Source: Selaginella moellendorffii
Taxonomy: Eukaryota > Plantae > Lycopodiophyta
NCBI RefSeq assembly: GCF_000143415.4
Contig: NW_003314274.1
Coordinates: forward strand, 2,772,623-2,836,622
DNA: 64,000 nt
Reading direction: 5' to 3'
Shown: piece after piece, positions 19,760 to 30,013 of the stretch
Layout of the letters: every line of letters begins with the position of its first letter
Position numbering within the stretch: the first letter of the stretch is position 1
Translations under genes and position numbers: made by a program
Notes under the pieces: generated by a model
The model's database searches: none
Told to the model about the DNA's origin: nothing
The model's input: only the letters and a program-made list of their open reading frames with translations

Positions 19760-22740
19760 TTGTTGACAGCTCCACTCTCCACTATTTCTTTATTCTCATT
19801 GCTCCTCCACGCTCAACCTCTCACCTCCCTTGTGCTCCTTGCTCCTGTGCCAGCATTCCTTTTCTCCTCCTCCTCCAGAGAAAAGCAGGAGGTGCTGAGG
19901 AGGCACTGAGAGTCATCCACCATTGTTTTGCTTCTGCTCATCTTCTTTCATGGTATCAGAGATGTTGAGGTTTACACTCTCTATGACATGATCCTAGGTG
20001 GCAGTAGTGCCACATCACTGATCCAACTGTAAGAGTCACGACTATTGATCGTGTATATACACAGTGATGATATATCAGAGTACCATCATTTGCTTCTGCA
20101 TATCTCTTCATGGTATCAGAGCCTTGAGCGCTCCAGATCCAGGGATGATCTGGGGGAGGTATATGCTCTCTATGACATGATCCTAGGTGGCAGTAGTGCC
20201 ACCCACTGATCTAGGTATGGAATCCGGGATCCTCCAATTCTTGTTTCCCTGCATAAAACAAACTTAATAAAGAATAGGATTTGTAGTGTCACTAGCACAT
20301 GCAAGATACAGCTGATGATTCTGCAGCATGCAATTGCATAGCCTAAGACTGCCACCAAAGTTATTGACAAGCTTGTGTGTGTGTCATTAATGATCAACCT
20401 GGAGTTGGGGCATGTCCAACAGCTGCTGGCTGTTGATGCCATGTGACTCCACTCCAATACTGGACAAGAATCTGCAGTGGAACTTGCATTTTTGAGGAGG
20501 CATAGTGTGTTGTACAAGGGAACCCCAACTAGTCCGCAGTGGTTAAGTGTGGATGGAGGTGGTGGTGGGCAAGGCAAACAGCCCCACCCACACCCGGCTC
20601 GGTCCATAACCATACTTACTCTTAGTGGCATTATTCTTGATGGCAACAGATCCCACTAAGGTGCTCCCAGTCTCCTAACACTGGCAGTTGCCCTAACCCT
20701 AACCCTGTCATCCTGGCCATTCATTGTGGATAGAGTAAATCTTATACATCTGTTTCTTTCTACATTTATTTCCTAGCAATATACAATTTATGCTCCTTTC
20801 TAGATTTGATGACATGGCAAAATCCTTGTGAGTTATAAGATGTGACTGTGCCATAATGTAGAAATATCACAGCCACATATCTGGAATGTATAAATTGATG
20901 GCAATACAAAATGACAAATGAGAATCATGTGTTTTCTTGCATGTCATAAAATCTTATCATAAAATGTTAGAATCTTAAATTCATAAATTCATAAAATTCT
21001 TTTACTTATTCTACATTCTTATAGTAGAAGGTGTTATTTCTAAAGCAATGTGACAGATATTTTACTATAGGTGATAGATGATAGTACACAGGTGAAATAT
21101 ATTGAAATGAGTATAGAAGAATGTGATGATTTCTGGCTTTTATCATGTATTAAATATATGTATAATATTTAAGACTAAAATGACATTTGACTTGGACAAT
21201 TTTGTAGTGTGTATGGGATCTTGCTTACACTTTAGACTTGCAAGCTAGTTTGAAAAATCATTTATCATATGAACAAACTTAAAGCATGTTTGTAGTTTGG
21301 TGATATTATGTATTAGTCCATCATCCAGGTCTTAGAAATTGATGTTGAGAAGGTTGGTCTATCTAATATTCTTACTCAAAGATTGGTGAAGACACACTAC
21401 AAGACAACTCCAGAGTTGTTGATTTAATGGAATGGCTATCTAGGAATAAAGCTACATGGGAAACTAAGGATGATGTGAAGGAGTGTTCTGAGTTTTGGTT
21501 ATAACTTAGATAAGATTTCTAAGGATGAGTTTCATAGCTGTTTTACTATATGATTTGAACTATTTTCTCCATTCTCATTCCTTTGTTTCTATGACTATAT
21601 TGTCATGTGAGAAAGCTGTATTGTTTTCTTTCTTTCATGATTGTTTATCATGATATTAGTGTTGTCATTTGCACATCTTTTCTCCATGGCTATATTGCCT
21701 TAGACTCCCTTCATGTAAGGCTCATTTAGCTTCTTGAGGCTAATGTGCTAGTGTGGAGGGGAGAATGACACAAATCATAAGAATATTCTAAGAATATCCT
21801 ATAGCCTAGGGGATTTAAGGCAAGAACACTTTAAAGGTTGGGAGGTTGGCCTAGGGTTTGCTCCTTGTTTGTTTCAATGAGAGTCAGACTTTGAATACTA
21901 TTGGGCAGCAATATTCTGCATATGATCAGCAATTGCTCTCAATTGTTTATGTTTTGTGGATGTGAAAGCATTATCTTTATAGTGTGGTGTTTGTAGTGTT
22001 GACAGATCATAAGCATTTTGTGTATTTGTTCACACAAAAGAAGTTGAACACTAGGCAAGCTTATTAGATGGTCAAACTCAAGGAGCACTAAGGAAGCTAG
22101 CTAGATGGTCAAACTCATGGAGTTTGGAGAGTTTCTTACTGATTATAGTCTAGGTAAAATTGAATATGGTGGCAGATACTTTATTGTGTATTCATTATGT
22201 GACATAATATATGTTATAGTTTTGTCATCATTTAAGTAAGTTGGTCAGCAAGTTTTAGTGTGATTTCTTTGCCTAAATAGAAGCACCTTTCTCATTGGTA
22301 AATGAGATGTTGTACTACAATGGCCATGTGTATTTACCATAGGTGGATGCATTGATTAATGAGGTTATTTTTCACTATCATGATCATCTTGAGGCAGTAA
22401 TTATGGGGGGAAGAAGATGTATGAGTTGATTAAACACAATTTTTAATGAATGAATATACTATTGTAAGTAATATGATCTCTATGAGTGGGTAAGGTGCCA
22501 TAAGAGAAGCTAGGGGGACTTTTGCAACCTTTGCCTATTCTAAATGCATGCTTTGCCAATGAAACCAGAAGTTACAGGAGATGTTATGCTTTAAAATTGT
22601 ATGTATACAAATACTGTAGAGACATGATGAGATAAATGTGATAAGAGAGATATGGAAAAATGATGCCACCTTATTCATACTGCTAATAGGTTTTAGTTCT
22701 CCCTTTCAATGGACACTTGTCAAGTTATCATGTTTGCAAT
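19760..22740 (+). mobile_element. Heavily decayed Ty1/Copia-like LTR retrotransposon remnant
   Basis: ...TTTCA followed by iMet PBS TGGTATCAGAG at 19951 and again at 20111. Followed by ORF-less sequence with only faint pol-like traces; no 3' LTR found; boundaries approximate. Confidence 0.5.
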
Positions 22741-23119
22741 GACTTTTGTTCATACAAACGTATAATAGACAATTATATGGATCCAATCACACAGAAGGCT
22801 TTTACATTATATATGAAGGTAATTCAATTAACATTTTTATTGCAAAGCCACAAACCTCAGAAAAAAAGGGAGTAGCAATAGTCGAAAGTCAATTAAAAGA
22901 AATATCTTTACACATGTTCAAATTTATTTGTGCAAAAGAATTAGATTGAAAGTCCAGTCATTAACCTTCTTTTAAGCTAACAGTCATATAAAAGTCAATC
23001 ACGACTACCTTTTCCAACTGCAGCTGGCTACGATGTGCTTCCAACCTGTTTCCTGCCTTTCTTTCAAACATGAACTTCATTGCCAGAGGATTTCTTTAAA
23101 ACAATACGAAAATCGACAT

Positions 23120-23634
23120 CTACTTTTTGGCTATCTGAGATTTGATCGTTGCAGTCAAACTTGGAATTCGAATTATGTGCTCCCGCACTGCGCTTTCAAT
23201 GCAGTGCTGTGCTTTTTCAGCAATTTGATTTTCTGTATTACGATGGCTATCACGCTCCTCCTCGAACTTTTCTTTGCAGTGGATTATGCTTTTATTGATT
23301 CTTTCCTACAGACTGTAATAGCAACAGGATATTACACATTACGCACTCAAACAGTTACCTGAAACCTGGCGACTTCACTTCTGATCACATTTTGTGCTGT
23401 TTGTGCTGGAATAGAACAATCTTCAATACATGCCTGAATGTTGGTCACTGTCTTGAATGTATCAAAGCAATTGGCTGCGCACTTATAGAAACCTTTCTGT
23501 AGGAAAGGATAAGACAAGACACCAATGTTCGCTGTAAATTAAACCTGTATGTTGAAGAAGATATGCATCTCTAATTCACCCATCGCATTGGTGAAAGCCT
23601 CGTTTAGTTCGCGCTCCAGTCTTTCGGTCTCCAT
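23120..23634 (-). CDS. FAM136A-like (DUF842) protein, 3 exons (23545-23634, 23359-23496, 23120-23305)
   Basis: Spliced translation METERLERELNE...KGFYKCAANCFD...ACIEDCSIP...RFQERINKSIIHCKEKFE...HCIE..IPSL has the CX3C pairs and FQER motif of FAM136A. All three exons are phase 0. Not in the supplied ORF track. Confidence 0.85.
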
Positions 23635-23652
23635 AAGCACAACCTAAAATGG

Positions 23653-26051
23653 CTATGCCTTAACAATCCTCTTATAAGCTGCAAGTGATGCTTCGAGAAA
23701 CCATTTGTCATCGGGAAGAACACTAGACAAAAAGAAATGAGCAAATTTCCTAGAGAGACATCAATTTAGAAACCTCATTGGATCTTGACCATTCAATGCG
23801 AATGCATTACTTGCTAGGGCGATGTTGCCAGCAACCACCTTATACATGACATCTGAAGTGCAGCTTCTTTCAGTGGCGATCTCAATCACGAATTGCATGT
23901 CTAACACGAACTACAGAGGAGAAACAAATTATGTAAGTGGAAGAAGTGACCAAAATTACCTTTCTAAGTCCTATTGAACTAAATGTTTTTGGACCTTCTT
24001 CAACTTGGCTCCAGAAAGATTTGTTGTGCTGGATCGCAGTTACCACACTGGTCAAAATATCTGTAATCAATAGAAGACAGACATGTTCTTGTCCCCGAAA
24101 AACATCTTCCCCTGCTTTAGCTAAGGCGACGACTTTAAAGAGGAGTTGCTGATTAAAGCATGTTAGAAAATGATAAGAAGAGCTAGCATACCTCGAAAGG
24201 TGACGATGGAAATGGGTTTTGTTGCCATTCTGGGTCTGCGGCTTCAGAATAAAGATCGGGAGTCAGAAGTTCTCGATCTTTATCGTACAGAATATCCTTT
24301 ATAAGAATGTTGCATATAGTAGACTTCAACTTCTCACACGTGTGCTGCAGGTATAACTTCCACTCTTTTTGCTGCTCATCATCAATGGAACTGTTGAAAC
24401 TCTCCTGACATTGAAGTAGTGAGCGAGAAACCTTGGGGAGTATATCCTCAGATAAAGCTGTTGCATTGCCCAAGACAACAAGTTTTTGTGACATTGTTTT
24501 TGCTAGTTTTATGTTTCCTTTCTGCAAGATCTGGCCGTCAGGCAGCAAAGCGTCTATAAGGAGATCCACATAGCGCTCATAGATCTTACACAAAGCTTCA
24601 AGGGCCGAGTGGGCCAGCTGAAATCTTGTCAAAGGTTTGACACCATGCAGAAAGTCCTGTAACTAGACTTCCAATCACCACAATCTTTGTTGGCTAAATT
24701 TCCATACCTCGATCAAAATGTTGAACGTGTGTGCACTGCTTGACAAGCGTACATAAATACCCTCTGCAGTGCGATAAGATGCTCTCCCACCCATTCTCTG
24801 ATCATGGAGGGGCTGGATAAGGTTCCAGTCATCTGCTGCAGCTAATGCAATGACGTTGTCCCCAATTCGTACAACATTGGCTGAAACTGCTTCCTCTACA
24901 GATGGCTTGAGAAGACTCGAAAGGTAAGGACAGATTGCAAGTCCCTGGGTTTCAAGGAGAAAACAGTGTCCCAGAGCCATATGCACGCATTCGGCAGCTG
25001 CTCTTAGTCCCCCTGCCGCTGCTAGAGATGAGAGCACATACTTCTTTAGTAAAGTAACAAATTCCTGGGTTATATCTCGTGCCCATAAAACAAGCTCTGA
25101 TCCGCAACTGAAGTTTCCATTAAACACAGCAGCGGAATCCTTTAAAGCCAAGGAAATAGCAGAAAATGCAAGCTGAGAAAGAGCTGCGGTGTAGGCACCG
25201 CCATATGAACTCTTGCTTCTGCATAAACCTTTGATATTGTACAGTAGCCTATTTCGATGAGACACAAGCAGCAAGTCATGAGCTCTTGAGCCTTCACCAA
25301 GTTTCTGAAGAACTGAGCATGTATCACGTAGCTCAACGCCACAAACAGAAGCCTTCATAGTCGAGTTAGCTAGTTCTTCTGCTAGTCGTTCTTTCATTGA
25401 TTTCAAGTTCAATGCAATTACGGCAGCTTCCGATTTCTGGGGTGCATTTTCATCAAAAAACACTCTCCCTTTCTCTAGCTCATCTAAAGCTTTATGTGTT
25501 TTCTTCTCAGCAAGTAAAATTTGGAGATTGTCCAGCAACTCTGGAAACTGTTGTCCCCACTTTGAAGATTTAGTACCTTCTTCTTCCTGGAGAAACTGCG
25601 GATTGCTCACATCTTGTGCGCATAACTCAGCTGATTTTTGAGGTTGTTGCAACAAACAATGAATTATCGCGGCTTGATTAGAAAGTAGATTTCGCACCCT
25701 AAAAAGTGATGTCTCCAGCCATGATATGTCCCGAGTCGCTCTGTACGACCCAAATATTAAAGAAGTCAAGGTAAATCAAGGCATTTAGTAACCTTATGAA
25801 GTAAGTATAATCTCTATGTACATTACTTCTCGAAAATTCTGTACATGTAATTTTTAGATCAATGAGTTCTTGCCGCAGCTTTTTCACTCCCTTCACACAA
25901 AACACGAACTTGGCATTGGAATATTTTTAATTAGACTACTGAAAACCTTTTCACTCATAAGTGGACACTTCGATCGGATGTACTGGTCAATATCAAAAGC
26001 GTCTCTTTCCAAAAGTCGTAAGTCGTTTGCTAGAGCTTCATCCGCTCCCAT
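23653..26051 (-). CDS. EXO84: Exocyst complex component EXO84 (EXO84B-like), multi-exon
   Basis: FDIDQYIRSKC..MSEK; YGGAYTAALSQLAFSAI; SELVLWA; LAAAGGLRAAAECVHMALGHCFLLE; C-terminal FVLDMQFVI..GQDPMSVLPDDKWF. Start could alternatively be 26069. Confidence 0.9.
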
Positions 26052-26231
26052 GGATCGACAAAGAACCATGGCTATGCTATGTTGGCAAACAGAAAAACAG
26101 GAAGACACGTCGTCCCTCAAGACATGTCATGCTGACTAGGATTTCCCATCGGATACAAAGCATCTTCTACGATGGGATGCAGACGGCCATAACCCGTGTA
26201 TGATTTTAGGGAAGAGACTGTACACATAAAG
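26052..26231. promoter_or_regulatory. Putative bidirectional promoter between EXO84 and pyruvate kinase
   Basis: Only ~160-180 bp separate the divergent start codons. Confidence 0.55.
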
Positions 26232-28675
26232 ATGCAGGCAACTCGAGTTGTTCTGCAGGAACCCCTACGCTTGGCAAAAATCCTTGATCCCTCAGAGCAG
26301 GTGCCTAGAATATTTTAGATTCTTTTCAGCTCAGTTCCATTTCTGTTACAGGTTGGACATGGAAATTATCTCTCAATGTCAAAGATTATTGGGACACTCG
26401 GGCCAAAGTCGCGTGCAGTGGAGACAATTGAGGGCATGCTGAAAGCCGGAATGACAGGTAGTTTGAAAGAACCATCATTGCCTCCGGTGAATTGTTTGCA
26501 GTCGCGCGAATTGATTTTTCATATGGAACACCGGAATATCATCAAGAAACAATGGAATTCTTGAAGCAGGCTGTTCGCAATACCCGAACCCTTTGTGGTG
26601 TACGTTTCTGTTTCCAGGTAGCTGATTAGTTTTAATGCCCTCGAGAGTTGAACAGGTTATGATGGATACACTTGGGCCAGAGCTCCAGATTATAAACAAG
26701 AGTGAAACTCCAATTGCTATTGATGTAGATGCCTTTGTCACCTTGACACCAGATCAAAGTAAAGAAGCGTCTTCGAAGTACCTGCCAATAAACTTTCAAA
26801 ACCTTGCTAACGTAAGCTTATTTTAGCTTTATTTTTCATGGTCGCCCTCACACAAATAACTTGTGCAGGTAGTGAAACCAAAAGACACAATCTTTGTTGG
26901 GCAATACCTTTTTACAGGAAGTGAAAGCACCTCAATATGGCTTGAGGTCAGACTCATTTCTCCTCGAAACTATTTCTACATCAAATTTTCAGGTGAATGA
27001 AGTGAAGGGCAATGAAATCGTGTGTCGAGCTAAAAACGCTGCTACCTTAGCCGGGCCACTTTTCACCGCACTGGCTTCTTCAGTGCGCATTGATTTACCA
27101 ACACTAAGTGAAAATGACAAGAAGGTGTGTGCGTCTTCATTTTGCCAGTGAGATTGAGATTTGCTGTTCAGGTCATTGCTTCGTGGGGTAAAGCAAATAG
27201 GATTGACTTCCTGTCTTTGTCGTATTGCCGACATGCAGAAGACGTGAAACAGGTATATGAGTGTCACCCATGAAACCTTTCAACCCTCGTTTGCAGGCTC
27301 GGGCACTTCTTACATCACTAGAGCTTACCAAGACACAAATTTTTGCGAAGATTGAAAATGCCGAGGTTTGCTCAGGTCAGATTCTCTGAAGTTAAGACTA
27401 AATTTGAAACTTAATAATGTTGTAGGGTCTTAAGCACTTTGATGATATACTCAAGGAAGCGGATGGGATTATCCTTTCTCGCGGGAACCTTGGAATTGAT
27501 CTTCCGTCCGAAAAGGTACAGTAATTCTCAAATTGTTATTGACACATACTGTTTTACAGGTGTTTCTCTTCCAAAAAGCTGCTTTATACAAATGTAATAT
27601 GCTTGGAAAGCCAGCAGTAATTACGCGTGTTGTTGATACAATGACTGAAAACCCCAGGCCGACGCGTGCGGAGGCTACAGATGTTGCTAATGCTGTTCTT
27701 GATGGTAAAAGAAGTCGGGTCGTTGATGTCTCAGCTATCCTGTCCATTCTAGGAAGCGACGCTATTTTGCTAGGAGCGGAGACATACAGGGGAAATTTCC
27801 CTATCCAGTGCATTGGAACAGTTCGCCGAATCTGCAGGGAGGCAAGTTCTACTTCTAAATAATAATCACGAGACTAGGATCATTTTCATGTAGGCGGAAA
27901 TTGTGTACAATCAAAGGTTTTATTTCAAGAAAGTCCTTGAATATGTTGGTGAACCAATGGGACATCTTGAATCTATTGCTTCCGCAGCAGTAAGTAACTT
28001 TAAGTACTTTAAGAAGCGATATAACGTTAACAAGTACCAGGTACGATCAGCAACTAAGGTCGGTGCGTCAATGATAATTGTATTTACATCTGCAGGCCAA
28101 GCTGCAAGGCATACGTTTAACTGATTCCCCTTTGTAATTTCTAATGCGGCTAATGCAGGTTGATAGCTAAATATCGACCTCTGATGCCTGTTATGGTGGT
28201 TGTCATTCCACAAATCAGCACCAATTTTATGCGATTTAGTTTCAGTGGGACGTTTACGGTACAGTTGTTCTGAAAACGAGCATATCTGACGTCAATCAAA
28301 TTTACAGACAACTCCTCCTACTGCAACACAAGAAGCAGTTCTAAACAGTAAGATCATGCTGGTATGTGTGTATCCTCAAACTGTGTGTGTGTCCCTCGTT
28401 CACTCTTTTACATTTTCTGTAGGCAAGACAATGCCTGATTGTCCGCGGATTATTTCCGATACTTGCGGATCCTCAGGTAAGAACTTTTTCCTGATATTGT
28501 GTTTAGGCCAGCTCGTTTGCAGGTAAGTACAAGCAATGCTGCGAATGAGCTCGTCTTGAAAATGGCTATTGAGCATGGAAAAATGGCTGGGTGCATCAAG
28601 GCTAACGATCGTGTGGTTGTATGCCAAAAGATTGGTGACTCATCTGTGGTCAGGATCGTAGATATGGCGGCATAG
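26232..28675 (+). CDS. Cytosolic pyruvate kinase, multi-exon
   Basis: [18 protein letters not shown]; [11 protein letters not shown]; [10 protein letters not shown]; FAKIEN; [11 protein letters not shown]; [28 protein letters not shown]; LIAKYRP; [12 protein letters not shown]. Confidence 0.95.
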
Positions 28676-28834
28676 AAACCTTCCTGTGCTGACTATACAA
28701 TCTCAAAGATCTTTTTAATAAGCTCAATTTAGGGCAATTAGCCGAATGGTGTCAAGGGACCAAGGGACACAACCCCCGTCCAAGATGGCATCACCTTTCC
28801 TCACTTTTGAGCAAAAATTGTGGCCAGTGCGTCA

Positions 28835-30013
28835 ATGGCCAGCACAACAAATGCCAGCAGCAGCAATGCAAGAAAGAACAGTATGGTATGCTGCTCGTCT
28901 TCTTCAGGATTACCGCAGCCGATCGCTATGCCACGGAGATGGGGAAGCCTACCACCTTATATGGATTGGAGGCTTTGGGGAAACCTTCCAGATGATCTAG
29001 TCGAGAGGGTCCTTGCTTGGCTCCCCATACCTTCTTTCTTCCGCTTACGGTCCGTTTCCAGGCGATGGCGGTCAATCATGTATTCGAAAGGCTTCATGGA
29101 AATGTGTGCCGACGTGCCACCGAGGGGTTTGTTCTTCCTAAAAGTTGCCAGGTGCCGATGTAGAATGGTAGCTGCATACTACCCCTCTGGGAACAAGTGG
29201 TTGAATATCCCGATTGGTTTTCTGCCCTCTCAAGTCAGCGTTCCTGCAGCTTCTTCCAAAGGACTTATGTGTTTTATAGCTACTCAGTATACTGATGGAT
29301 ATAGCGTTCTACTCGTTTGCAATCCATTGACCAGGTGCTGGAAGGCACTACCACCTATGACAACGCGTAGGTACCCTTTTGTGGTAGCCCTGGTCACTGA
29401 CAGGAAGCTAAGTGCTTACAAAGTTATTGTTGCGGGAGACTATAATTCCTTTGATAATAGGCGGACCACGGAGGTTTATGACTCTGTTACCTCGACATGG
29501 AAACAATCTGGCCCTCTTCCACGAGAAGAGGAGATTACAAAAAACATAGTCGCCTGCAATGGTTATTTATTTTGCTTAAGCCGAGGACCTGGGAATGGCT
29601 TGCTAGCGTACAGCTTGCAGCAGGAAATCTGGATTAAAGTTCGAACAGGCAGAATGCCAGGATACTCTAAGTTTCGGCATCTGGTCGAGTGCAATGGAAG
29701 AATCATTATTGTCGGAAAGGCGTTAAGAAGGCAGGTCCTCGGACTTTATATATGGCACCTGGACCCGCCCACAATGAAGTGGAAGGAGCTGGCAAAAATG
29801 CCCCAGCCACTTTCCGAACAATTTTTTCGGACGCAGTCGGAGTGCTTCTTTTGCAGCGCCCTTGGAGACCAGATATTCATCAGCAGATTTTTCTGCGACA
29901 TAGGACTATTATACAATATCAGTCATGACACATGGCAATGGATCCCGGATTGCCCCAAGATAGCGAATCCATTCATTCTCACCTTGGAACCAGGTTTCGA
30001 TGCAGTTTACTAA
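28835..30013 (+). CDS. Intronless F-box/kelch-type protein
   Basis: F-box WGNLPDDLVERVLAWLPIPSFFRLRSVSRRW; ASSKGLMCF, LVCNPLTRCWKALP, EVYDSVTSTW. First in-frame ATG is at 28835. Confidence 0.9.
   Translation: MASTTNASSSNARKNSMVCCSSSSGLPQPIAMPRRWGSLPPYMDWRLWGNLPDDLVERVLAWLPIPSFFRLRSVSRRWRSIMYSKGFMEMCADVPPRGLFFLKVARCRCRMVAAYYPSGNKWLNIPIGFLPSQVSVPAASSKGLMCFIATQYTDGYSVLLVCNPLTRCWKALPPMTTRRYPFVVALVTDRKLSAYKVIVAGDYNSFDNRRTTEVYDSVTSTWKQSGPLPREEEITKNIVACNGYLFCLSRGPGNGLLAYSLQQEIWIKVRTGRMPGYSKFRHLVECNGRIIIVGKALRRQVLGLYIWHLDPPTMKWKELAKMPQPLSEQFFRTQSECFFCSALGDQIFISRFFCDIGLLYNISHDTWQWIPDCPKIANPFILTLEPGFDAVY

What the first reader, a model, noticed from the sequence alone, without database searches (positions are those of the whole stretch)
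23120..23960. EXO84 stop and FAM136A-like ATG are 18 bp apart, with an in-frame splice acceptor between them: dicistronic mRNA or spliced fusion
EXO84 ends with TAG at 23655-23653 and an intact three-exon FAM136A-like ORF starts at 23634 on the same strand, leaving no room for a promoter. The spacer reads CCATTTTAG|GTTGTGCTT-ATG, an acceptor in phase 0 with FAM136A. Splicing from the phase-0 EXO84 donor at 23959 (…GLRK|gtaatt) to 23643 would give an in-frame EXO84-FAM136A fusion. Alternatives are re-initiation on a dicistronic mRNA or a promoter inside EXO84 exons. This is the tightest co-oriented junction in the window and is invisible in the ORF track.
Basis: partly seen in the sequence, partly recalled or inferred. 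Interest (0 to 1): 0.8.

Follow-up and report, generated by a model that had tools for sequence, protein, structure and literature searches.

The report
EXO84 and FAM136A-like genes 18 bases apart
In the spikemoss Selaginella moellendorffii, an intact gene for a small mitochondrial chaperone (FAM136A-like) starts 18 bases after the stop codon of the exocyst gene EXO84, so their RNAs must overlap; I could get no RNA data to show whether they share one message.

Summary
On the minus strand, EXO84 (7 exons, about 704 codons) stops at 23655-23653. A complete three-exon DUF842/FAM136A ORF (137 codons) starts at 23634, after an 18-nt spacer. The window is S. moellendorffii scaffold GL377578.1. GenBank annotates the second gene only as a 109-aa "partial" protein. 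Its first exon is unannotated; I confirmed it by homology to a stand-alone paralog.

The interpretation could not be tested. Three RNA runs laid zero reads, and no RNA-derived contig or protein for the locus is on record.

Sequence features argue against two readings:
- Algal-type leaky scanning: ORF1 is 2,115 nt, holds 48 AUGs (observed/expected 1.25) and has a strong start context.
- The proposed fusion: an in-frame AG is expected by chance (P about 0.29), 4 of 6 EXO84 donors are phase 0, the fusion would delete 68 conserved EXO84 residues, and no EXO84-DUF842 fusion appears among relatives.

My best reading (about 50%) is two overlapping tandem transcription units. FAM136A-like would start inside the last, AUG-free 69 nt of the EXO84 coding sequence. 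EXO84's 3' UTR would run into FAM136A-like.

The scan has already noted at least 16 similar tight gene pairs elsewhere in this genome.

The parts
23653..26069 (-). EXO84 (exocyst subunit) coding region: 7 exons (26069-25947, 25890-25793, 25740-24708, 24656-24192, 24148-23960, 23910-23774, 23722-23653), introns of 43-56 nt, about 704 codons
   Evidence: Pfam Exo84_C at E 1e-14. GenBank calls a 698-aa gene over the same span. Exon phases and open frames checked. The C-terminal exons align with angiosperm EXO84B and with exons in two other plant contigs.
23653..23722 (-). Last EXO84 exon (…VLPDDKWFLEASLAAYKRIVKA, TAG at 23655-23653)
   Evidence: It is homologous to the conserved EXO84B C-terminal motif DPYS|VLPEDEWF, so the last intron is spliced and this stop is genuine.
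23635..23652 (-). 18-nt spacer CCATTTTAGGTTGTGCTT between the two ORFs.
   Evidence: EXO84 and FAM136A-like are in the same frame, with two TAGs between them.
23545..23634 (-). FAM136A-like exon 1 (METERLERELNEAFTNAMGELEMHIFFNIQ), not in the public annotation
   Evidence: 52% identity (E 2e-9) to the N-terminal exon of paralog P0002, with N-termini coinciding within one residue. The GenBank model EFJ29275.1 starts inside intron 1 and is flagged partial.
23359..23496 (-). FAM136A-like exon 2 (twin Cx3C region)
   Evidence: Pfam DUF842 at E 4e-12. 100% match to P0001.
23120..23305 (-). FAM136A-like exon 3, with TAG at 23122-23120
   Evidence: Pfam DUF842 at E 2e-7. It matches P0001.
23958..23959 (-).
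   Evidence: Its normal partner is the acceptor at 23911 (49-nt intron). Use with 23644 would make a 316-nt intron that skips two conserved exons.
23635..23703 (-). The only AUG-free stretch upstream of the FAM136A-like ATG (69 nt). This is my predicted window for its own transcription start. It holds a TATA-like TATAAG at 23676-23671.
   Evidence: the nearest upstream ATGs are at 23704 and 23711, and TATAAG is at 23676. That a start site lies here is an inference and is not shown.
22836..23296 (-). Candidate poly(A) signals: AATAAA at 23296 (inside FAM136A-like exon 3), 22928 and 22841 (AT-rich DNA after the FAM136A-like stop)
   Evidence: There is no AATAAA between the EXO84 stop and 23296, so EXO84 RNA probably runs at least 360 nt into FAM136A-like. 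This rests on a motif only and is weak.

Best explanation
These are two separate, functional genes squeezed into overlapping tandem transcription units within a very compact gene cluster.

EXO84 mRNA cannot end within 18 nt, so its 3' UTR runs into, and probably through, the FAM136A-like gene. This makes a structurally 'dicistronic' read-through RNA from which only EXO84 is translated.

The FAM136A-like protein is a small twin-Cx3C mitochondrial intermembrane-space chaperone. I propose it is made from its own short-leader mRNA, whose start site lies inside the last EXO84 exon. I predict the start between 23703 and 23640, downstream of the TATA-like TATAAG at 23676.

Shown here: the anatomy, the completeness and conservation of both ORFs, and the features that make leaky scanning and fusion unlikely. 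Inferred: the internal start site and where EXO84 RNA ends.
For: 1. Both ORFs are intact and conserved. The DUF842 score of P0001 is 90.5 bits. The window copy and its paralog are equally similar to angiosperm FAM136A (29-39% vs 29-36%), and all six cysteine columns are kept. Both intron positions are shared with the paralog. So the protein is very likely made.
2. It cannot be reached by scanning from the EXO84 cap. There are 48 AUGs in 2,115 nt (observed/expected 1.25), and the EXO84 start context GCCATGG is strong. Algal bicistrons have short ORF1s (median 291-357 nt), weak Kozak contexts and AUG depletion (PMC11892635).
3. In Arabidopsis, second ORFs of read-through bicistronic RNAs are rarely translated, these RNAs are NMD targets, and 202 of 271 second genes have their own start sites (PMC9768141).
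4. The 69 nt before the ATG hold no AUG, whereas a start further upstream would add an overlapping out-of-frame uORF from 23711. A TATA-like motif sits 42 nt before the ATG.
5. The neighbourhood is extremely compact. There are 162 nt between the divergent pyruvate kinase (PK) and EXO84 start codons, and 159 nt between the PK stop and the next F-box start. Short leaders and promoters overlapping neighbouring genes are therefore the local norm.
6. The two proteins have no known functional link: exocyst versus mitochondrial chaperone.
Against: There is no RNA evidence of any kind, so no start site, poly(A) site or junction was observed. TATAAG is only a near-match to a TATA box, and the implied leader would be very short (about 7-17 nt). 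The FAM136A-like ATG has a weak -3 base (CTTATGG). Other notes of this scan report assembled RNA running unbroken through similar tight pairs in this genome, which fits either reading. A promoter firing inside an actively transcribed coding exon would be subject to transcriptional interference.
Confidence: 0.5

Rival explanations
1. True bicistronic mRNA. One mature EXO84-FAM136A-like transcript is the only source of both proteins, and ribosomes reach ORF2 by termination-reinitiation or another non-scanning route.
For: The 18-nt spacer leaves no intergenic promoter. No AATAAA lies between the EXO84 stop and FAM136A-like exon 3. ORF2 is conserved and so must be translated somehow. The scan has at least 16 notes of similar tight pairs in this genome, some with assembled RNA crossing the joint. 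Bicistronic plant and algal mRNAs exist (CDC26-TTM3 as cited in PMC9768141; PMC7896298).
Against: ORF1 has about 704 codons, 48 AUGs and a strong start context, so leaky scanning is out. Re-initiation after long ORFs is rare (PMC9768141). The junction RNA shows no unusual structure (z = +0.95). Two spliced introns downstream of the EXO84 stop would make such an RNA an NMD target (established plant NMD rules; inference). All known translated bicistrons have a small ORF1.
Confidence: 0.2
2. The AG at 23645-23644 is used as a splice acceptor. Either the reader's EXO84(1-636)-VVL-FAM136A fusion forms from the donor at 23959, or an upstream EXO84 exon is spliced onto FAM136A-like (shared promoter, alternative splicing).
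For: The donor and acceptor are in phase. The acceptor's pyrimidine content (0.57) lies within the range of the real acceptors of these genes (0.43-0.86). Intergenic splicing is common in Arabidopsis read-through RNAs (158 of 271 loci).
Against: An in-frame AG is expected by chance (P about 0.29), and 4 of 6 donors are phase 0. All eight real introns here are 43-56 nt, against 316 nt for the proposed one. The fusion deletes 68 residues homologous to the conserved EXO84B C-terminus. Pfam finds no Exo84 or DUF842 domain in any of the three long FAM136A hits, and none of the 120 listed EXO84 relatives carries a DUF842 domain. The FAM136A-like N-terminus already coincides with its paralog's. Attaching a small twin-Cx3C protein of the mitochondrial intermembrane space (IMS) to a 630-aa cytosolic fragment is functionally implausible (inference).
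Confidence: 0.08
3. The FAM136A-like copy has lost its promoter and is not expressed independently. It would be a silent or dying duplicate that rides along as EXO84 3' UTR, while the stand-alone paralog P0002 does the job.
For: A second FAM136A gene with its own upstream region, including telomere-repeat-like promoter motifs (telo-box repeats), exists on GL377595.1. No RNA run in the index holds the locus, three RNA runs laid no reads, and RefSeq appears to have no model for it.
Against: The 137-codon ORF, four canonical splice sites and all conserved cysteines remain intact despite 51% divergence from the paralog. Its similarity to outgroup FAM136A equals the paralog's. The zero-read result is explicitly 'no test'.
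Confidence: 0.12

Closest known systems
Arabidopsis read-through (polycistronic) transcripts with intergenic splicing (Kurihara et al. 2022, PMC9768141)
   Same: Co-oriented neighbours where gene 1's RNA runs into gene 2. ORF2 is rarely translated from the joint RNA. The second gene usually has its own start site. Splice sites can bridge the two genes.
   Different: Arabidopsis pairs have ordinary intergenic spacers, and the read-through RNA is a minor, NMD-suppressed by-product. Here the spacer is 18 nt, so overlap is obligatory and not occasional. No RNA data exist for this locus.
Green-algal bicistronic loci translated by leaky scanning (Gallaher 2021, PMC7896298; Duenas 2025, PMC11892635)
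   Same: Very short inter-ORF distance (the algal median is 40-183 nt). Two complete, unrelated ORFs lie on one strand.
   Different: Algal ORF1 is short (median 291-357 nt), AUG-poor and has a weak Kozak context. Here ORF1 is 2,115 nt with 48 AUGs (observed/expected 1.25) and a strong context, and the small ORF comes second.
CDC26-TTM3 bicistronic transcript of land plants (as cited in PMC9768141 and PMC11892635)
   Same: A land-plant locus with two ORFs on one mRNA.
   Different: There the first ORF (CDC26) is tiny, which permits leaky scanning. The order of sizes is reversed here.
Other tight gene pairs noted by this scan in S. moellendorffii (e.g. LpxC-PPR at 17 nt, COX16-PIG-P at 0 nt, APC15-Pol iota at 26 nt)
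   Same: Same genome and same kind of junction, with 0-37 nt between stop and start.
   Different: Most have a small ORF1. This pair belongs with the minority that have a large ORF1 (LpxC-PPR, ALP1-like-PPR, AtuA-OPR), for which overlapping genes were judged more likely. These are unchecked AI notes.

Membership tests
DUF842 / FAM136A | Pfam PF05811 above the gathering score | tested here: met
   P0001 (exons 2-3) scores 90.5 bits against a cut-off of 25.1. Exon 2 scores 46.3 bits and exon 3 scores 31.2 bits on their own.
DUF842 / FAM136A | Conserved cysteines (two Cx3C pairs plus two single Cys) and the conserved three-exon structure | tested here: met
   The alignment keeps all six Cys columns. 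Intron positions after ...LQ and ...FQ are shared with paralog P0002 and with angiosperm genes, as seen from intron read-through in mispredicted ORFs.
EXO84 (exocyst subunit) | Exo84_C domain and the conserved C-terminal helical region | tested here: met
   PF16528 at E 1e-14. PF27696 is precomputed on the annotated product. The C-terminal exons align with angiosperm EXO84B and with other plant contigs.
Bicistronic mRNA translated by leaky scanning (green-algal / CDC26-TTM3 type) | Short ORF1 | tested here: not met
   ORF1 is 2,115 nt, against medians of 291-357 nt.
Bicistronic mRNA translated by leaky scanning (green-algal / CDC26-TTM3 type) | Weak start context at ORF1 and AUG depletion before ORF2 | tested here: not met
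   The context is GCCATGG (G at -3, G at +4). There are 48 AUGs, observed/expected 1.25, against about 0.5 in algae.
Bicistronic mRNA translated by leaky scanning (green-algal / CDC26-TTM3 type) | Short inter-ORF spacer | tested here: met
   18 nt.
Bicistronic mRNA (any mechanism) | One mature capped, polyadenylated molecule carries both ORFs, and both are translated | tested here: inconclusive
   Read laying placed 0 reads in 3 RNA runs, reported as 'no test'. No RNA holder is in the index. No RNA-derived product is in the protein collection.
Spliced read-through fusion (conjoined gene) | Donor and acceptor in compatible phase | tested here: met
   but this is at chance level.
Spliced read-through fusion (conjoined gene) | Junction-spanning RNA, or fusion proteins in relatives | tested here: not met
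   No reads were available. No EXO84+DUF842 architecture appears among the FAM136A hits or the 120 EXO84 hits. The absence among relatives is real; the RNA part is untested.

The most novel reading that the evidence does not exclude
S. moellendorffii makes the FAM136A-like protein from a genuine EXO84-FAM136A bicistronic mRNA, even though ORF1 has about 700 codons. This would need a mechanism other than leaky scanning, such as efficient termination-reinitiation across 18 nt or post-transcriptional cleavage and re-capping. Together with the other tight pairs in this genome, it would point to operon-like expression in a vascular plant.
Probability: 0.13. Interest if true: 0.75.

Novelty: new member of a known kind. 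Interest (0 to 1): 0.4.

Why it matters
If FAM136A-like uses a start site buried in EXO84's last coding exon, the locus shows how far promoter and coding sequence can overlap in a compact plant genome. It also corrects the public annotation, which lacks exon 1 and calls the gene partial.

If one mRNA feeds both proteins instead, it would be the first land-plant bicistron with a long first ORF, and current scanning models would not explain it. Together with the other tight pairs in this genome, that would make S. moellendorffii a system for studying polycistronic expression in vascular plants.

Either way, one long-read RNA experiment plus a 5'-end experiment could settle the question.

Tried and rejected
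- **RNA reads.** The look-up of sequencing runs listed no RNA holder of 22600-25800. It listed only three 2026 raw-read runs with the same species label, plus tiny runs holding 0.00 of the words. Read laying on 22400-25400 (3,001 letters, within the operators' limit) laid 0 reads in all three. The tool calls this 'no test', and I do not count it as silence.
- **RNA-derived proteins or contigs.** A search with P0001 returned only P0001 itself. A search with the 364-aa EXO84 exon found only the RefSeq model at 99% and nothing else above 47%. Even DNA-derived Logan ORFs of this species are absent, so this absence says nothing about expression.
- **RefSeq model P0052.** It could not be located on a contig.
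- **Synteny.** Two other plant contigs carrying EXO84 (L003, L004) show no FAM136A within the 250-640 nt available downstream. Their species are unknown.
- **Duplication history.** There is no EXO84 remnant and no DNA similarity at the paralog locus L002, so only FAM136A was duplicated, and long ago.
- **PDB sequence search** with an EXO84 exon gave nothing useful.
- **RNA fold of the junction.** No excess structure (z = +0.95). A local 10-bp stem pairs the stop region with the pre-AUG region, but it is not significant.
- **Stop-codon read-through fusion.** Rejected, because two in-frame TAGs separate the ORFs.
- **Exhaustive exon-chain script.** It timed out. I set the exons by homology instead.
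- **Literature.** I found no paper on nuclear polycistrons or this locus in Selaginella.
- **Joined spliced models.** All searches were made exon by exon or with stored protein ids.

Full report
**What is in the sequence.** On the minus strand, the last EXO84 exon (23722-23653) ends ...AYKRIVKA-TAG, with the stop at 23655-23653. It is followed by CCATTTTAGGTTGTGCTT (18 nt) and an ATG at 23634. The downstream ORF has three exons: 23634-23545, 23496-23359 and 23305-23120. They hold 30, 46 and 61 codons, and the two GT..AG introns are 48 and 53 nt. Pfam places DUF842 (the FAM136A family) on exons 2 and 3, and Exo84_C on the large upstream exon.

**Where the window comes from and how it is annotated.** A representative search with exon 2 returned one 100% match, P0001. 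P0001 is EFJ29275.1, [quoted passage not shown]. It lies on scaffold GL377578.1 of GCA_000143415.2, and the fetched locus is identical to the window. The GenBank model is 109 aa and begins "LQ", which is translated from the end of intron 1. Exon 1 is therefore missing from the public annotation. Exon 1 is real: it is 52% identical (E 2e-9) to the N-terminal exon of a second S. moellendorffii FAM136A gene, P0002, and the two N-termini coincide within one residue. ATG 23634 is thus the conserved start, and no N-terminal extension is needed.

**The paralog.**
- P0002 (140 aa) sits alone on GL377595.1 (L002 8001-8753) and has the same two intron positions.
- Telomere-repeat-like promoter motifs (telo-box repeats, TTAGGGTTTAGGGTTTAGG) lie 10-30 nt before its ATG.
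- No EXO84 remnant and no DNA-level similarity to the window are found there.
- The two proteins are 49% identical.
- Each is about 29-39% identical to angiosperm FAM136A, and both keep the two Cx3C pairs and two further cysteines.

The window copy is therefore an old duplicate that has been conserved as well as its sister, which argues that it is translated. Human FAM136A was recently described as a chaperone of the mitochondrial intermembrane space (IMS) (bioRxiv 10.64898/2026.08.03.742567).

**EXO84.** I set seven exons by homology, giving 2,115 nt and about 704 codons; GenBank has 698 aa. The last three exons align with angiosperm EXO84B...PLGLQQ|FYLDMKF...DPYS|VLPEDEWF... against ...SIGLRK|FVLDMQF...DPMS|VLPDDKWF.... 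They also align with exons in two other plant contigs. The last intron is therefore spliced and the TAG at 23655 is the genuine stop. The long low-complexity tail of angiosperm EXO84B is absent here. The RefSeq model P0052 (564 aa) retains the last intron (ending ...DPMRFLN), skips two exons and uses two alternative sites. Homology does not support it, and I could not learn whether RNA does.

**RNA evidence.** None could be obtained.
- No RNA run in the index holds the 3.2-kb stretch.
- The three raw-read RNA runs offered under the same species label laid zero reads on 22400-25400. The tool calls this no test.
- The protein collection has no RNA-derived FAM136A-like or EXO84 product from this species.

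The central question, one RNA or two, therefore stays open. What follows is inference from sequence and from published systems.

**Tests of the proposed mechanisms.**
- *Leaky scanning.* EXO84's exons hold 48 AUGs (observed/expected 1.25), and its start context is GCCATGG. Translated algal bicistrons have short, AUG-poor first ORFs with weak contexts (PMC11892635). This mechanism is excluded.
- *Stop-codon read-through.* The two ORFs share a frame but are separated by two TAGs (23655 and 23646). This is unlikely.
- *Re-initiation.* After about 700 codons this is expected to be rare. In Arabidopsis, second ORFs of read-through bicistronic RNAs are rarely translated, and those RNAs are NMD targets (PMC9768141). 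The junction has no unusual RNA structure.
- *Spliced fusion.* The arithmetic is right, but an in-frame AG that is open to the ATG occurs in 29% of random 18-mers. Four of six EXO84 donors are phase 0. The proposed intron is 316 nt, whereas all eight real introns are 43-56 nt. The product would lose 68 conserved EXO84 residues. No EXO84-DUF842 fusion exists among the hits.
- *Own start site.* The 69 nt before the ATG (23703-23635) are free of AUG. A start further upstream would add an out-of-frame uORF from 23711 that overlaps the FAM136A-like start. A TATA-like TATAAG lies at 23676.

The first AATAAA after the EXO84 stop is at 23296, inside FAM136A-like exon 3. The next two are at 22928 and 22841, in AT-rich DNA past the FAM136A-like stop. 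EXO84 RNA therefore probably extends well into, or through, the second gene.

**Context.** The locus sits in a very compact cluster. There are 159 nt between the pyruvate kinase (PK) stop and the next F-box start, and 162 nt between the divergent PK and EXO84 start codons. The scan's earlier notes list at least 16 comparable tight pairs in this genome. Most have a small first ORF. The few with a large first ORF, such as LpxC-PPR at 17 nt, were judged more likely to be overlapping genes. These notes are unchecked leads. I verified only the species identity myself.

**Verdict.** The junction is real, and the annotation can be improved by adding the missing exon 1. My probabilities for the readings are:
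- about 0.5 for two overlapping tandem units, with an internal start site for FAM136A-like and an EXO84 3' UTR that runs into it;
- about 0.2 for a true bicistron;
- about 0.08 for a product spliced through the AG at 23644;
- about 0.12 for a silent duplicate.

This is a new member of a known kind (read-through or overlapping tandem genes in plants). It has a modest chance of being something more unusual, and long-read plus 5'-end RNA data would settle it.

**Limits.** All searches used single exons by reference or stored protein ids.

Noticed in passing
window 23120-23634 (-): The public GenBank model SELMODRAFT_92880 (EFJ29275.1, 109 aa, 'partial') starts inside intron 1 and lacks the 30-codon first exon. 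No RefSeq protein for this gene turned up in the 60-190 aa range.
   Followed up: yes
window 23653-26069 (-): The RefSeq EXO84B model P0052 (564 aa) retains the last intron (ending DPMRFLN*), skips exons 2 and 5, and uses an internal donor in exon 1 and an internal acceptor in exon 4. All four choices disagree with homology to other EXO84 proteins. I do not know whether RNA-seq drove them.
   Followed up: partly
window about 26069-28835 (L001 668-3434): The gene cluster is extremely compact. Only 162 nt separate the divergent pyruvate kinase and EXO84 start codons, and only 159 nt separate the pyruvate kinase stop from the next co-oriented F-box gene's start.
   Followed up: partly
L002 7960-8000 (GL377595.1): The stand-alone FAM136A paralog P0002 has tandem telo-box repeats (TTAGGGTTTAGGGTTTAGG) 10-30 nt upstream of its ATG. 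The window's spacer CCATTTTAGGTT resembles CCAGTTAGGGTT there, so it may be a decayed remnant of the same leader. The resemblance is too short to test.
   Followed up: partly
window 23644-23701 (-): GTTTCT at 23701 is the same hexamer as the intron 6 donor. Together with the AG at 23645-23644 it would define a 58-nt intron of typical size. Its removal would give EXO84 an alternative, frame-shifted C-terminus (...DDKW-LCLWRPKDWSAN*) that ends inside FAM136A-like exon 1. I have no evidence that it is used.
   Followed up: no
window 22400-25400: Three 10.8-Gb RNA runs from 2026 with the same species label gave not one read on two housekeeping-type genes, out of 9.2 million records read from each. 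Either the runs are not this organism or strain, or both genes are very weakly expressed in those samples.
   Followed up: no
window 19923-23120: About 3.2 kb of AT-rich DNA (GC 0.31-0.35 over 21000-23000) without an annotated gene separates the FAM136A-like stop from the next gene, a TTC21/IFT139-like gene. This contrasts with the tight packing upstream.
   Followed up: no
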